Under the pieces are notes generated by a model. That model had not been told where the DNA came from. It saw only the letters and a program-made list of their open reading frames with translations, and made no database searches. Positions 492-49,025 of a DNA stretch of 64,000 nt are shown here, piece after piece (position 1 is the stretch's first letter; each line of letters opens with the position of its first letter). The translations under genes and the position numbers were made by a program. This stretch comes from Haliotis rufescens (lineage: Eukaryota), in the NCBI RefSeq assembly GCF_023055435.1, contig NW_025963890.1:10912001-10976000 (forward strand). The letters are read 5' to 3'.

Positions 492-762
492 CTTTGTAAT
501 CTTCAGGTATGAGTAGGGGTGCCCCGACCTCCACCGTGTGTCCAGTTTGAGGATCAATATTGAGACTGGTTGCTGTCACCTTGTTACACACACGCTTCTG
601 GTACAACAACATGGGCTGAAGAAAATCAAAGTTGGACTTCTCCGTGGATATGTCATCATTGAGTGTATAGGCACACTGCACCACACGAGGGAGGGGGTAC
701 TTCTGTAGAATGTCCTCCAAGGAATATACCCCAGTTTCCCACTGCAGTTTTGGCTTATCCAT
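492..762 (-). CDS. CABIT-domain (GAREM/THEMIS-like) gene copy A, first coding exon; exon 2 lies beyond the left edge of the window
   Basis: ATG at 762 gives MDKPKLQWETGVYSLEDILQKYPLPRVVQC...LLIPEDYK-G, ending at donor AAAG|GTAAGT (intron starts at 491, phase 1). Nearly identical to exon 1 of copies B and C. The start codon is tentative because the frame is open upstream to 897 without an ATG. Confidence 0.8.
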
Positions 763-1641
763 CAGAAGGATGCTAGAAGAGGACAACCCTCTCTCTGGCA
801 ACCAAAGATCAACCTCCTTCTGCCAACTAGAGGACACTCTTCTTCTGCTCCTGTCCGGGTCCCTTGCGCATATACTTGATGAGCAAATAAAACACACTTC
901 CTTGTTGGTTTAAAAATCTTTCCACATTGTGTGTATATTAGCATAAGTGTACAGCCCGCGAATAGCTGACAAACACCTTAACAACAAGGATTCGCTGTCG
1001 TCCTGTATATATGAGAATACAACTAGTAAATGCTTATTATATTACTTATTTACATTCTATTAGCACATGGGTGAACACGACTATGAGGTATTCACGCTTA
1101 TTCACTGCTTCTTGAGTTGTTGAAATTAAATCATAACCACATTTTTTAACCATGTCGCCTAAAACTCGCATATTAGTTTTGATTCAAGTTAAAGTGCTTG
1201 CAGACAAAGTTTACGTTGATGTATTTTCAGTTGCACATTCCGTCCTCCGTATACTATACAATATAAGTACACATGCAGCATTGTAACATCCTTATTCTAT
1301 TCTATTCTAGAATGCATCCCTATTCAAACAGCTCCCCCAGTAGTGCTGATTGTCTGTGACTGGAGGTATCATGAGTGCAATATCTGGTCTTGTAGTCCAG
1401 GGTCAGGACCTCTAAACTACTGGACAGTGTTTATTCGTCATCTCTTTTGTGATCTGAGGAAAACGTTTATTTCTGAGATATATTACAAATACCAAACTAG
1501 TAAATGAGATTTATAAATATTGCTATGTGTATTCATAATGGAATGTACAAAAGAAGTAGAGCTGTCTCTTGACCATATCTCTCTCCATGTAACCAGTTTT
1601 GTTGTTTTGGGCCTATGGTCTGTATAACTGTACGGAATAAA

Positions 1642-1810
1642 TGGGGCACGAGTGGCCCAGACGTCTAAGGCGCCGCAATTCGCTGTGCAGAGTTGTGTCC
1701 CTTGGGCACTCCAGAAACCTATGATCGCGGATTCTAATCCGGGTTAAATTGTCAGCTCGTGGGTTTCACCAAACTGGTTTCTGACGCCCAGCTCTTCGGG
1801 TTTTCCTCTT
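1642..1810 (+). mobile_element. SINE family 1, degenerate and internally deleted
   Basis: ggggcacgagtggcccagacgtctaaggcgccgc head. Confidence 0.7.
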
Positions 1811-1826
1811 TATCTCTTAGGCGTGA

Positions 1827-45188: not shown

Positions 45189-47260
45189 TCACCACAGTAT
45201 ATCTGACTCACCAGCCGAAAATCTACTTTTACGCTCCCCTTCAGGATCATCACCAGACCCAACAATTTTCATACTCGGTAAAGAAATCCTCTTGGCGATG
45301 CCCTCGTGAGTACTGGGTGGGCCCGCTTGCGCCTTATGAATGTCTCTCTCCAGCTTAACCCGTCCCTTTCTGTCTAACACTGGCTTCATGTATCCGCTGT
45401 CATCTTCACTGGAACTAGAGTCAGCCATGAAGGATTCCAGAACTCCACCAGCTCCATCTGAACTGGAACCTGAAGCAGAACCTGAGGAGAGGCTGCTCCC
45501 AGAGTCAAATGTATCATCCGGGGGATCAAAGTCAGGGATGTACATTGAGTCGAATCCATCACTGAAGTCATGCAGTTCATCAATAGTTGTGCTCTTCTTT
45601 TCTTTGACGTTTATTGTTGTAACATGGGGCTTGGTAAATGAATGTACATCTAAAATGTCTGAAAAAGATACCTTTTTCTTTTTGAGCATCTTAGGGTCTT
45701 CTATAGGAGTGGCTGGTTGGCTGTTCTCAACAATTTCAGGGTCTCCTCCAACAATGTTTATGGTAGAGTAGTATGAGGCTGGTTTTCTTGCTTGTTTCTT
45801 GTCAACCTTAGATTCTGCAACGTGGATTTCTTCAGGTTTCAAATAATTTGTTTGAATGGTTGCTGGCACTCCACCAGTGACAACCTGCCCACCGATACCT
45901 TGATCTTGAAAGACGTGTGTGTCGCTCATGCTGCTGGTGGAAGAGCTGTCGTCATCTTTCCCGGATGTTGCTGTCCACACCTCTTCATATGCGTTTGGGC
46001 GAGGGGGTCTGGGTTTCTTTGTTTCGGCTTTGTGTGAATTAACTGTAGGCACTGGTGGTTCTATCTTCACATCTACACTAGACAGTTTGGGGACTTCTGA
46101 AGGAAGGCTGGTCGCTGTATCGTTCCTTTTGACACCATTTTGTTGTGGAAGAGATCCAACATTTGCCTTAGTCATATTAGGACGATCACTATTAACTGAC
46201 CCTTTGCGAGATCCATTAATGGCTTTTGCCACACCTACTTTAGATTCTTGTGGTGTTGCCGGCTCTGGCATTCTTGGACGATTGTCAATTGAGGACCTTC
46301 TGGAATTGGCATTAATTTTAAGTTGTGGTTGAGGAGAGACTTTTGACATTGGAGCTGATTGTACTTTTTCCTGCGACTTGCCATCAGTGGATTCTTGAAC
46401 TCGTTTGCCATCACTGACTGTCAGTGCATTTCCTTGTTTCAGCTCTGCCTGTTTCACTGGTGCAGTAGGACCTGACATAATTTCAACAGCTTGCGGAGAG
46501 GGAGTTCGGTCTGTCATAGTTGACGGTTTGGTATTATTTGGAACAGGAACAGAATTCACAGCCGGAGATACGAAGGAGATTCCAATCGCTGTTATTTTTT
46601 CTTCTATGGGACTCTCTGCCTGTCGGAACATCTTGATTCCTCTCATAAACATATCACCTTTGTCCTGGAACAGATTTAAAGCGCTGATGTATCCAGGGTT
46701 CTGGCACAGCTCCTTGCTCTGAACAGCAACACGAAATTTGTTAGGGATATCCACAGAAAGCTCATGCAAGGTATTGCTTGGTTTTAGCAGAGTTGAGGAA
46801 AGGATTGAGGTGTCTTCCTGCACATTCTCCAAAACCATGATTTTGGTGAATACTCCTTCCCCAGAAGGTTCTCTACCATACACAAGTTTCACAACACAGG
46901 GGAATTTTTGTTTCAATAGGATGTCCTTTATCTGCATGACTGGGGTGTTGTTGGGTCTGGTTTTATTCGTGCAGACGTAAAAGGTTCCTTCTGTATTCAC
47001 GGAAAGTAGAACTTCCCTGTCATTATCATCCACACAGTGTAAATACTTCTCAGCTCCGTCAAGGATTCCCATTTTCAGAACATCTCCCGGACAGAGGTGC
47101 CTGGAGGCTGTCACGGTATCGCCCACTTTCTGTACAGACTGCACGTTACGGGTACCACCGATGAGAAACGTGTGACAGTCGGATATCGCTAACTGGCCCA
47201 CTTGGCGGTAGTGGGGAATAGCTTTCAGCGTCAGCTCTGACCCGACGACAGCAAACCAGC
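45189..47260 (-). CDS. CABIT-domain gene copy E, coding exon 2 (spliced protein about 831 aa)
   Basis: Acceptor ttttgttcatcag|GC TGG (G-WFAV); YLHCVD-x4-EVLLSVNTEGTF; LCPGDVL; KFPCVVKLVYG; long Ser/Pro tail. A possible internal donor CTG|GTGAGT at 45211 makes the C-terminus uncertain. Confidence 0.85.
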
Positions 47261-48601
47261 CTGATGAACAAAAAAAACAGGACATAAAAACTTTGATATA
47301 TATCATATATTATCATCCAAAACTGGCTCCGACAGGAGATATCGCTTGGGTGAGATCAAGCAATATCTACACTGTAGATATCGCTGCAATGAAATTGCAT
47401 CACAATGCTTTGCAGACCATTGTGACGTCACTGGTTACCATGACATCACAATCAAATGACAACACTAATTGCTCTGCAACTGAAGCTGTTAGCAGTACTT
47501 TTTACACTTAAAACACTGCTTAATACTGTCTACAAACTGAAAAAGTTGGAAGAATGATGTTGGATGATAAATAAAATCTCACCCTCGTGTCTTTTGATTG
47601 AGAAAAGTGGAAAAAATCCTCGGCAAGTTTTCCCACTTTATCACCTCGTGTTGATATATTTGATATCAAAAGACACTCGGGTGAGATTCTCTATTTATAG
47701 CTAAAATGGATAGAATTATCATTAAACCGCCCGCATGTTATCAGATATCAGCGGGCCACTGTAACTTGATAATGCCCTCATATTGCTTGACGACGGGCCA
47801 TTATAAGCCGGTTGTTAGGTGACGTCATATGGTAGGGATAGGTGACGTCACGTGCAATAGTGACGTCATCTGGTTTGTTCTATGACGTTTCCATAATTGT
47901 AAAAGTTGGTCAGTGACATTGGTGTCGATTGCAGTAAATGTTTCAAAACCGATAAGGTTGTTTCTTTTTATTTGATAACAAATTCCATCCATTTTAGCTA
48001 TAATAACGTTAACGCTTTTTTTCAGGGCATTATTATTTGCACAAGCCCTCGGTTTTTCAACTGCCCTCCTTCGTCGGGCAGTCAAGGGAAGACCTCGAGC
48101 TTCTGCAAATGATAATGCCCTGAAAAATAGCGTTACCCTTATTATAACTTACTGACGGAAAACTTTTGGGTAGTTTGAATTGATTATTAAATGCAATGCA
48201 GCGTAAACAAACATCCCTCTATATCCCCAGAATATTTCTCGGTCGATGCCTTTCCCAGTTAAAGGGTTTGGGTTAACATATTTTCGGACAAACGAATGAT
48301 GTTACGGAATTAAGTCCTTATAGTTTATATCATATGAAGATGTTCCAAACAGTGTGGTCCAGAAAGCGGGGTTTCCATGCCGGGAGTCCAGTCTAACGAG
48401 GTTTGGAGAATTCCTGTTTCGAAGTTTTGACACCCACATTGTCTACTCAATTATATCTATGACACATTTTCTAGACAGCTACGCGTCTACCGTCTTACTG
48501 AGCATATTATATCATGATATGTGATAATATATTTCGAAATAGGCTCGGGCAGCAATTTACCAGAAATGCTTTCAGATTCAGGTTTAGCAATAGGTACCGA
48601 C

Positions 48602-49025
48602 CTTTGTAATCCTCGGGAATAAGCAGGCTGTTCTCCGTTTCCAGCAGAGTCTTCCCATCACGAGAGTCCACGGCCAAACTACTGGCAGCCACCTTCAACC
48701 CATCCTTCTTACTCTGCAGCATCAGCAGCTGCCCACAGTCGAACCCCATGGTCCCCCTTCCCAGGTCACAGAAACTGTGGTCGCACATCACCACCCGGGG
48801 CAGGTACAGGTTCCTGATGATGTAGTCCAGGTTGAACATCCCGGGCTCCCAGGTCAGGTTGGGCTTCGGGACTGGTGCTGGTGCTGGAGTAGGTGGCCTC
48901 GGGTTGCCGCCGTGCCATGTCTGGCGCTTAGCTGCGCCCTGGGGCTGCTTTGTTCCCGTCAGTCTCCCTAATGTCTTATTTCGCAAAGACCCTGGAGCTT
49001 TGGTTGGTAGTTTGATTTCCTCCAT
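48602..49025 (-). CDS. CABIT-domain gene copy E, coding exon 1
   Basis: ATG 49025; basic/Pro-rich extension, then LTWEPGMFNLDYIIRNLYLPRVVMC...LLIPEDYK-G, donor AAAG|GTCGGT. An acceptor-like atttccag| at 49058 suggests an upstream UTR exon. Confidence 0.85.

What the first reader, a model, noticed from the sequence alone, without database searches (positions are those of the whole stretch)
492..49025. Tandem array of at least five CABIT-domain (GAREM/THEMIS-like) signalling adaptor genes in an invertebrate
Seen: five same-strand paralogs share W-x5-[LM]-x2-I...P in exon 1 and a [IV]P-x2-Y-x-G|WF junction. The four with exon 2 in the window keep the hydrophobic-x-C-x-D...L[PS]...F core Cys motif (FLRC, FLLC, YLEC, YLHC). 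Established: CABIT proteins (vertebrate THEMIS and GAREM, Drosophila Serrano) are usually low-copy Grb2/SHP-phosphatase-linked adaptors, and THEMIS tunes T-cell receptor signalling. Inference: this is a lineage-specific expansion with a conserved CABIT head and rapidly diverging docking tails, possibly a diversified phosphotyrosine or immune signalling system. The array continues past the left edge.
Basis: partly seen in the sequence, partly recalled or inferred. Interest (0 to 1): 0.85.

Follow-up and report, generated by a model that had tools for sequence, protein, structure and literature searches.

The report
Abalone cluster of GAREM-like CABIT genes
An abalone chromosome carries a tight cluster of seven intact genes for CABIT-domain signalling adaptors, the family of vertebrate GAREM and THEMIS. 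Five of them are a lineage-specific multiplication of one gene that other molluscs keep as one lineage each, which makes this a real but moderately novel gene-family expansion.

Summary
Window 492-49025 holds five minus-strand genes (A-E), each with two coding exons. Each has a canonical GT-AG phase-1 intron at Y-x-G|WF and an invariant core cysteine. Pfam CABIT passes its cut-off in B, C and E, and in the H. asinina ortholog of D. None of the five N gaps touches an exon or intron.

The genome is a Haliotis close to H. cracherodii. NCBI models of congeners show the same splice junction.

The array does not run on to the left; only exon 2 of gene A lies there. It continues to the right with two older paralogs, F and G.

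Trees place A-E inside one mollusc-wide orthogroup, in which bivalves and other gastropods show one lineage each. Every gene found has a 1:1 ortholog in other Haliotis species, so the expansion predates the genus.

The ancestral protein layout matches GAREM: CABIT, proline-rich stretch, invariant YENI, then SAM. Only C keeps the SAM domain, and B and E have lost YxN.

Exon 1 of A, B and C is homogenised by gene conversion (dS 0.13 against about 0.95 in exon 2).

Function, immune or otherwise, is untested, and RNA evidence could not be obtained.

The parts
492..762 (-). Gene A, coding exon 1 (ATG at 762; donor after 492). Exon 2 lies left of the window at L026:5620-6899.
   Evidence: ORF and donor AAAG|GTAAGT. 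98% identical to H. cracherodii model P0005. Exon 2 found.
12033..13384 (-). Gene B, coding exon 2: rest of the CABIT head plus a 217-aa tail, with stop. The YxN motif and the SAM domain are absent.
   Evidence: Pfam CABIT 39.6 bits. Acceptor TTTTCAG|GATGGTTT. 95% identical to P0001. Motifs.
14132..14444 (-). Gene B, coding exon 1: N-terminal part of the CABIT domain.
   Evidence: P0001 begins and splices identically.
21789..24151 (-). Gene C, coding exon 2: CABIT head and a 554-aa tail with PxxPxK motifs, YENI, four YxxP and a C-terminal SAM-like domain.
   Evidence: Pfam CABIT 27.3 bits. The SAM end of the orthogroup profile hits PDB 2dkz at E 4.2e-8. Motifs. Ortholog P0009 is 93% identical.
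25642..25875 (-). A 234-nt exact copy of an internal piece of gene C exon 2, lying in gene C's intron between two 98% direct repeats.
29295..29604 (-). Gene C, coding exon 1.
   Evidence: 95% identical to P0009 residues 1-104.
36621..38062 (-). Gene D, coding exon 2: a divergent CABIT head (YLEC) and an acidic tail with YVNL and four YxxP.
   Evidence: Aligned over the whole head with the invariant Cys. No direct Pfam hit, but its H. asinina ortholog P0034 scores 37 bits. Motifs.
39617..39881 (-). Gene D, coding exon 1 (ATG 39881, donor GAAG|GTTTGT after 39617). The remainder of the ORF, 39387-39616, is a dispersed repeat and is not coding.
45189..47260 (-). Gene E, coding exon 2: CABIT head (YLHC) and a 457-aa Ser-rich tail with PRPPRP; no YxN motif.
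   Evidence: Pfam CABIT 38.4 bits. Ortholog P0012 (H. asinina) is 72.5% identical. Motifs.
48602..49025 (-). Gene E, coding exon 1 (donor AAAG|GTCGGT).

Best explanation
This is a cluster of intact genes for cytoplasmic GAREM-type CABIT adaptor proteins in an abalone (Haliotis).

Origin. One ancestral mollusc gene encoded a CABIT domain, a proline-rich stretch, an invariant YENI tyrosine motif and a C-terminal SAM domain. It was duplicated in tandem in the lineage leading to Haliotis, before the living species split, and gave five genes (A-E). These sit beside two much older CABIT paralogs (F, G).

Likely mechanism (inferred). Each protein keeps the folded CABIT head, which consists of a core plus an SH3-like subdomain holding the invariant cysteine. 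The disordered tails have diverged into different sets of docking motifs:
- C keeps the full ancestral set, including SAM.
- A keeps a Sos-like PPPLPPR motif and YENI but has no SAM.
- D has YVNL plus YxxP motifs.
- B and E have lost YxN.

The copies would therefore couple the same head function to different SH2/SH3 partners (Grb2-, SHP- or Crk-type). Some may act as partial or competing adaptors.

Concerted evolution. Exon 1, which encodes the N-terminal part of the CABIT core, is kept almost identical among A, B and C by gene conversion, while exon 2 diverges freely.
For: - Gene structure and canonical splice sites. The same junction appears in independent NCBI models of H. cracherodii, H. 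asinina and H. rubra.
- Pfam CABIT passes its cut-off.
- The SAM end matches 2dkz at E 4.2e-8.
- Y and N of YENI are invariant in 16 mollusc orthologs.
- Trees: A/B/C form a Haliotis-only clade (100/98-99). D and E each pair with an H. asinina ortholog. All 14 Haliotis rows form one clade in the best tree, but with weak support (41/45). They lie within a starred gastropod clade (98/95) in which Patellogastropoda and Caenogastropoda+Heterobranchia each form one lineage.
- The head shows dN/dS of about 0.29, so the copies are under purifying selection.
- Exon 1 dS is 0.13 against 0.88-1.01 in exon 2. Nucleotide identity of 91-95% is bounded to the exon, and some residues are shared among paralogs within a species but differ between species.
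Against: - No RNA evidence from this genome.
- Monophyly of A-E is the best tree but poorly supported (41/45). D and E have long stems, so they could be older gastropod paralogs lost elsewhere.
- The representative library merges sequences above 50% identity, which could hide expansions in other molluscs.
- D itself does not reach Pfam significance.
- The docking motifs are short patterns that also arise by chance in disordered Pro/Ser-rich tails. No binding was tested.
- A direct superposition on a solved CABIT structure was not possible. No THEMIS chain appeared among the structural matches. 9i3p was published in May 2026, after the Foldseek library's April 2026 cut-off, and the CABIT2 coordinates were not yet public when that preprint was posted.
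Confidence: 0.8

Rival explanations
1. The cluster is an ancient, conserved set of paralogs. D, E and the A-C lineage would date to early gastropods or molluscs and were lost or missed elsewhere. On this reading nothing is specific to the abalone lineage.
For: - F and G are clearly old subfamilies with orthologs in Patella, Pomacea and Candidula.
- Old linkage is indicated. Pomacea C0Q70_16632 (A-E type) and C0Q70_16634 (F type) are two locus tags apart. One 119-kb ENA contig holds A-E-type, F-type and G-type genes together.
- D and E have long stems, and their position is an unresolved polytomy.
Against: - In the best tree all Haliotis A-E rows form one clade.
- No non-Haliotis sequence among 412 representatives groups with D, E or A-C.
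- A/B/C monophyly is strongly supported.
Confidence: 0.15
2. Some copies, notably B and the short-tailed ones, are decaying duplicates on the way to pseudogenes and are not functional adaptors.
For: B has lost YxN, the clear SH3 ligands and the SAM domain. The cluster genes evolve far faster than the single-copy CABIT gene L001. Cluster genes are 60-80% identical to H. rubra or H. asinina orthologs, while L001 is 96% identical to its H. rubra ortholog.
Against: - All five reading frames are open.
- Their lengths match the orthologs: A 516 aa against 516, B 554 against 552, C 890 against 890.
- Head dN/dS is about 0.29.
- B is retained in four Haliotis species.
Confidence: 0.05

Closest known systems
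Vertebrate GAREM1/GAREM2 (FAM59A/B)
   Same: Both have a single N-terminal CABIT domain of about 330-345 aa with helices at its end, a disordered tail with proline-rich SH3 ligands and tyrosine motifs, and a C-terminal SAM domain. The mollusc SAM profile's best solved match is 2dkz. The GAREM layout is taken from PMC8086153 and the CABIT2 preprint.
   Different: - Only gene C keeps the SAM domain.
- The conserved tyrosine motif is YENI, not the LPYEEL reported at GAREM1 Y453.
- Abalone has five tandem copies where vertebrates have two dispersed ones.
- Orthology to vertebrate GAREM was not tested, because no vertebrate full-length sequence was available by reference.
THEMIS/THEMIS2
   Same: Both have a CABIT domain with an invariant buried cysteine in an SH3-like subdomain. 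THEMIS is a Grb2/SHP-linked adaptor.
   Different: THEMIS has two tandem CABIT domains and no SAM domain. A-E have one. The profile match to THEMIS chain 9i3p_B is only E 1.1. The two-CABIT gene of this genome is L003 at 11.31 Mb, outside the cluster.
Drosophila Serrano (sano) type CABIT proteins
   Same: Single CABIT domain followed by a proline-rich tail.
   Different: The Serrano-type gene of this genome is L001 at 66.3 Mb. It is single-copy, has no intron at the Y-x-G|WF position and is 96% identical to H. rubra. Insect 'sano' proteins are among its hits. It served as the outgroup to the cluster family in the trees.

Membership tests
CABIT domain (Pfam PF12736) | Match to the family HMM above the gathering score (24 bits) | tested here: met
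   Scores from single exon-2 ORFs: B 39.6, C 27.3, E 38.4, F 37.1 and G 37.9 bits. D has no direct hit, but its ortholog P0034 scores 37. Full-length orthologs P0004 and P0012 score 55.9 and 57.8.
CABIT domain (Pfam PF12736) | Invariant cysteine in the hydrophobic-x-C-x-D motif | tested here: met
   The Cys is invariant in the 8- and 9-sequence alignments and nearly invariant (at least 90%) in the 64-sequence one. It lies in strand 184-195 of the model, inside the SH3-like region 117-225. Burial was not measured.
CABIT domain (Pfam PF12736) | Nearly all-beta fold: a core with an inserted SH3-like head subdomain | tested here: met
   The AF2 model has pLDDT 92.4 and is mostly strands. VIA-align finds SH3-like barrels over residues 117-225, with IdeR, FeoA (3e19) and 3g1j among the hits. 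These are the same neighbours reported for solved THEMIS CABIT2. This evidence is indirect.
CABIT domain (Pfam PF12736) | Direct superposition on a solved CABIT structure | not testable with these tools
   Foldseek against PDB entries up to 2026-04-08 gave no match at E <= 0.001. THEMIS entry 9i3p is present in the sequence copy only. The CABIT2 coordinates had not been released when the preprint was posted.
GAREM-type adaptor | One N-terminal CABIT domain plus a C-terminal SAM domain | tested here: inconclusive
   Met for gene C and for the mollusc orthogroup: profile positions 889-957 match 2dkz at E 4.2e-8. Pfam SAM models did not hit gene C's end on its own. A, B, D and E show no SAM-like sequence.
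GAREM-type adaptor | Proline-rich Grb2 SH3 ligand and phosphorylatable tyrosine motifs in the tail | tested here: inconclusive
   Only motif patterns were examined. A has PPPLPPR and YENI. C has PPAPPPKP, YENI and four YxxP. D has YVNL. E has PRPPRP. B has none of these. Y and N of YENI are invariant in 16 orthologs. Binding and phosphorylation were not tested.
GAREM-type adaptor | Orthology to vertebrate GAREM1/2 in a tree | not tested
THEMIS | Two tandem CABIT domains | tested here: not met
   Each of A-E has one CABIT head. Only L003 shows two CABIT stretches.

The most novel reading that the evidence does not exclude
The five-fold multiplication, the fast divergence of heads and tails and the gene conversion confined to exon 1 may together mark an adaptively diversifying adaptor system. 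In such a system a common CABIT core function is wired to different phosphotyrosine partners, for example in haemocyte immune or gamete signalling. The divergence in question is 60-80% identity between congeners, against 96% for the single-copy CABIT gene. It would be an invertebrate parallel to the THEMIS/THEMIS2/GAREM split of vertebrates, and a natural series of tail variants for working out what the CABIT domain does.
Probability: 0.2. Interest if true: 0.65.

Novelty: new member of a known kind. Interest (0 to 1): 0.45.

Why it matters
The biochemical role of CABIT domains is still unclear, and they are mostly discussed through four human proteins.

This locus shows that molluscs hold a much larger CABIT repertoire. 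The abalone genome has at least 12 loci, all found on one chromosome. They comprise at least five subfamilies matched by the exon-2 profile, plus a Serrano-type gene, a two-CABIT gene and one unclassified locus.

It also offers a natural set of five recent paralogs that share a head but differ in SAM, YxN and SH3-ligand content. That is useful for comparative tests of which partners depend on the head and which on the tail.

The exon-limited gene conversion is a clean example of concerted evolution of one part of a domain.

For abalone biology, fast-evolving tandem signalling genes are candidates for studies of immunity or reproduction, but nothing here shows such a role.

Tried and rejected
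Synteny in Pomacea, H. asinina and the 119-kb ENA contig rests only on shared contig lengths and locus-tag numbers.
- The joined (spliced) proteins of the window were not built or searched. Exons were searched one by one by reference, and full-length orthologs returned by the tools (P0001, P0004, P0009 and others) stood in for the spliced products.
- Foldseek against PDB gave nothing significant.
- phmmer of P0001 against PDB sequences gave only chance hits.
- Pfam found no SAM domain in gene C's last 91 aa on its own. The orthogroup profile was needed for that.
- The first literature search was too loose. A whole-word search for CABIT found 91 papers; none of the 40 listed concerns CABIT genes in a mollusc or other invertebrate.
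- Two papers were not held: Johnson 2009 (PMC2908989) and Tashiro 2009 (PMC2740447).
- The search of earlier findings returned nothing for this place or for the words CABIT, GAREM and THEMIS.
- Rejected explanations: haplotig or assembly duplication, because the paralogs differ by about 40% in protein; pseudogenes, because the frames are open and dN/dS is about 0.29; and THEMIS-type identity, because there is a single CABIT domain.
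Full report
**What is in the sequence**

The ORF list shows five minus-strand pairs, each a short ORF followed downstream by a long one. The short ORFs of A, B and C end in ...LLIPEDYKGK*. In D and E the frame runs on past the donor, ending ...PASYEG (D) and ...LLIPEDYKG (E) at the splice site. The long ORFs contain ...GWF[AC]V....

At nucleotide level every short ORF has a canonical donor directly after the first base of the glycine codon:
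- AAAG|GTAAGT in A, B and C
- GAAG|GTTTGT in D
- AAAG|GTCGGT in E

Every long ORF in the window has a polypyrimidine tract and an AG directly before G.TGGTT. Splicing therefore gives Y-x-G-W-F across a phase-1 intron in all five genes.

Coordinates are listed under 'parts'.

The motifs it named are present, with one correction. The exon 1 motif is W-x6-[LM]-x2-I, not W-x5.

**Assembly gaps**

The five N runs lie at 1962-2418, 3306-3465, 3905-4063, 4103-4247 and 41003-41136. The first four lie between the 5' side of A and the 3' end of B. The fifth lies between D and E. No exon or intron of any gene model contains an N, so no reading frame depends on a gap. What the gaps leave open is the true spacing of A-B and D-E, and whether non-coding 5' exons or promoters are hidden there. 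I did not try to fill them.

**Organism and independent gene models**

B's exon 2 finds an NCBI protein of Haliotis cracherodii at 95% identity. It also finds models from H. asinina (65%) and H. rubra (80% over the CABIT head; that model is truncated). The genome is therefore an abalone close to, but not the same as, H. cracherodii.

These models read ...IPEDYKGWFAV... and start at the same methionines. The two-exon structure was thus reached independently by another annotation pipeline in congeners.

Predicted lengths agree with the orthologs:

| Gene | This genome (aa) | Ortholog (aa) |
|---|---|---|
| A | 516 | 516 |
| B | 554 | 552 |
| C | 890 | 890 |
| D | about 567 | 565 |
| E | about 832 | 829 |

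I did not build or search the joined proteins of the window. Exons were searched one at a time by reference, and the orthologs returned by the tools served as full-length stand-ins.

**Family**

Pfam CABIT (PF12736, cut-off 24 bits) is passed by the exon 2 ORFs of B (39.6), C (27.3) and E (38.4). It is also passed by F and G. For D it is passed by the H. asinina ortholog (37 bits), while D's own exon 2 gives no hit. D nevertheless aligns over the whole head with all invariant positions.

Full-length orthologs match the HMM from position 2 or 36 onward, so exon 1 encodes the N-terminal part of the domain.

An AlphaFold2 model of the 346-aa H. rubra ortholog of B, built with 64 homologs, has mean pLDDT 92.4 and is almost all beta, with two C-terminal helices.

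This is good indirect support for the same fold. A direct superposition was not possible. The THEMIS entries are held only as sequences, and the CABIT2 coordinates had not been released at the time of the preprint.

**Extent of the cluster**

A six-frame search of the whole genome, together with tblastn on 40 kb of flank on each side, gave the following:
- Gene A's exon 2 lies 3.6 kb left of the window, and no CABIT sequence lies in the next 36 kb.
- To the right lie gene F on the plus strand (exon 1 at L027:2710-3078, exon 2 at L016:1339-2085) and gene G on the minus strand (exon 1 at L029:335-664, exon 2 at L028:8746-9708).
- Both have the same intron position. In F the tryptophan is replaced (HYPG|FF).

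The cluster therefore holds seven genes in about 89 kb.

Further CABIT loci lie on the same 79.7-Mb chromosome:
- a two-CABIT ORF at 11.31 Mb (L003)
- two more two-exon genes at 56.8 and 67.6 Mb
- a strongly matching gene at 66.3 Mb, uninterrupted at the Y-x-G|WF position (L001, 121 bits)
- one at 74.4 Mb (L002)

These counts are lower bounds.

**Age of the copies**

A profile of the nine exon-2 heads found 412 representative proteins at E <= 0.001 among 1.84 billion. Names were recovered for 30 of them, in addition to those already named.

In trees of the head region:
- A, B and C form a Haliotis-only clade (100/98-99). B and C each have orthologs in H. cracherodii, H. rubra and H. asinina. 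For A only an H. cracherodii ortholog was found.
- D and E each pair with an H. asinina protein.
- All of these lie in a starred gastropod clade (98/95). That clade also holds Patella+Lottia as one lineage and Caenogastropoda (Pomacea, Littorina, Nucella, Babylonia) plus Heterobranchia (Aplysia, Elysia, Lymnaea, Physella, Bulinus) as another. Gigantopelta and the bivalves lie outside it.
- In the best tree the 14 Haliotis rows form one clade, but with support of only 41/45.

The simplest reading is four duplications on the stem leading to Haliotis, completed before the living species diverged. The alternative is that D and E are older and were lost elsewhere. That is not excluded. The library also merges sequences above 50% identity, which could hide expansions in other taxa.

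F, G and the 56.8- and 67.6-Mb genes belong to separate, older subfamilies. Their orthologs occur in Patella, Pomacea, Candidula, Crassostrea and others.

Old linkage of the subfamilies is suggested by two observations. Pomacea locus tags C0Q70_16632 (A-E type) and C0Q70_16634 (F type) are two apart. One 119,141-bp ENA contig carries an A-E-type, an F-type and a G-type protein.

More distant members come from a brachiopod, an annelid and crustaceans.

**Which known protein the cluster genes resemble**

A profile of 16 mollusc members of the A-E orthogroup matches one solved chain well. That chain is 2dkz, 'hypothetical protein LOC64762', an 84-residue SAM domain, at E 4.2e-8 over the last 69 profile positions (E 1.8e-6 with a second alignment). 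From memory, LOC64762 is human FAM59A, now GAREM1. I could not verify that mapping with the tools.

Gene C and its orthologs carry this SAM end. A, B, D and E do not.

The same alignment shows an invariant Y-x-N (YENI). This fits the Grb2 SH2 consensus pYxN, which is established knowledge.

Published GAREM has a CABIT domain, a proline-rich Grb2-binding region, phosphotyrosines and a SAM domain (PMC8086153). The ancestral mollusc protein therefore has the GAREM layout.

THEMIS membership fails because there is only one CABIT domain.

The Serrano-type gene of this genome is L001. Its relatives include insect 'sano' proteins.

**Divergence pattern and proposed mechanism**

Identity between orthologs in this genome and in H. 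asinina or H. rubra:

| Comparison | Head | Tail |
|---|---|---|
| Orthologs | 76-86% | 57-69% |
| Paralogs A-E | 31-61% | 20-42% |

L001 is 96% identical to its H. rubra ortholog. The cluster genes therefore evolve much faster than a single-copy CABIT gene in the same genome pair. Head dN/dS among A, B and C is about 0.29, which indicates purifying selection.

The tails carry different motif sets:
- A: PPPLPPR, YDNV and YENI
- B: none of these
- C: several PxxPx[KR], YENI, four YxxP and SAM
- D: YVNL and four YxxP
- E: PRPPRP and two YxxP

I infer subfunctionalised adaptors that share a head and differ in SH2/SH3 docking and in SAM-mediated association. B may be a stripped-down or competing form. 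None of this was tested, and short motifs in disordered Pro/Ser-rich sequence are weak evidence.

**Gene conversion of exon 1**

Among A, B and C, a stretch of 275-346 nt is 91-95% identical. It starts about 40-50 nt inside exon 1 and ends up to 66 nt into the intron. The exon 2 heads are only 71-73% identical.

Synonymous divergence is 0.13 in exon 1, against 0.88-1.01 in exon 2. Selection on the protein cannot explain a seven-fold difference in dS.

Two exon 1 positions, QP[M/L]LL and VEVG[A/D/S]P, carry a residue shared by the paralogs of one species but different between species. Gene-specific residues also persist, for example STEQ in C of three species.

I conclude that conversion among the three exon 1 copies is recurrent and short-tract.

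**Limits**

- No expression data could be obtained.
- No partner, tissue or immune role is shown.
- The literature library holds no paper on CABIT genes in molluscs.
- Earlier notes of this scan had nothing on this place.

**Verdict**

The observation and the CABIT assignment are right. The 'lineage-specific expansion' is supported for A-E, with a caveat on D and E.

Three points need correcting:
- The system is GAREM-like, not THEMIS-like.
- It extends to the right, not to the left.
- It is shared by the Haliotis species examined and already present, unnamed, in their annotations.

It is a new, moderately interesting member of a known kind.

Noticed in passing
window 25642-25875 (-), flanked by 25874-26418 and 25088-25642: A 234-nt stretch is 100% identical to an internal part of gene C exon 2 (23821-24054). 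It sits in gene C's intron between two 98% identical direct repeats of about 550 bp. It is either a very recent partial copy or an assembly artefact.
   Followed up: partly
window 4747-5854, 5863-6495, 9169-11036, 13729-13937, 30788-32782, 32915-33477, 36179-36510, 42698-43052, 52133-54226, 58850-60595, 63550-63996: The spaces between the CABIT genes hold many minisatellite arrays, with units of 26-70 nt and lengths up to 2 kb. One perfect 50-nt x 4.2 array lies in gene B's intron. Several produce the long proline-rich or repetitive ORFs in the ORF list. They might favour unequal exchange or conversion.
   Followed up: no
window 39390-39600 and at least 12 other places between window -37770 and 93424: A dispersed repeat of about 170 nt, which reads GRSGSLVVKAFARHAEDPGSIPD... 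in one frame, lies directly after gene D's exon 1 donor and inflates that ORF. Copies occur on both strands across the region. ARAGORN finds no tRNA gene in the window.
   Followed up: partly
L003 (G000:C112:11309398-11312952): A 621-aa open frame with two CABIT stretches, a THEMIS-like tandem layout, lies 335 kb from the cluster.
   Followed up: no
L001 (G000:C112:66321223-66325020): This is a conserved single-copy CABIT gene of the Serrano/sano type. It has no intron at the Y-x-G|WF position, carries two PPPLPPR motifs and is 96% identical to H. rubra. It is a useful slow-evolving comparator for the fast-evolving cluster genes.
   Followed up: partly
G000 contig C112 as a whole: All CABIT loci found in this 1.33-Gb genome lie on one 79.7-Mb chromosome, at 10.9-11.0, 11.3, 56.8, 66.3, 67.6 and 74.4 Mb. 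The search scores only the best candidates, so this may be incomplete.
   Followed up: no
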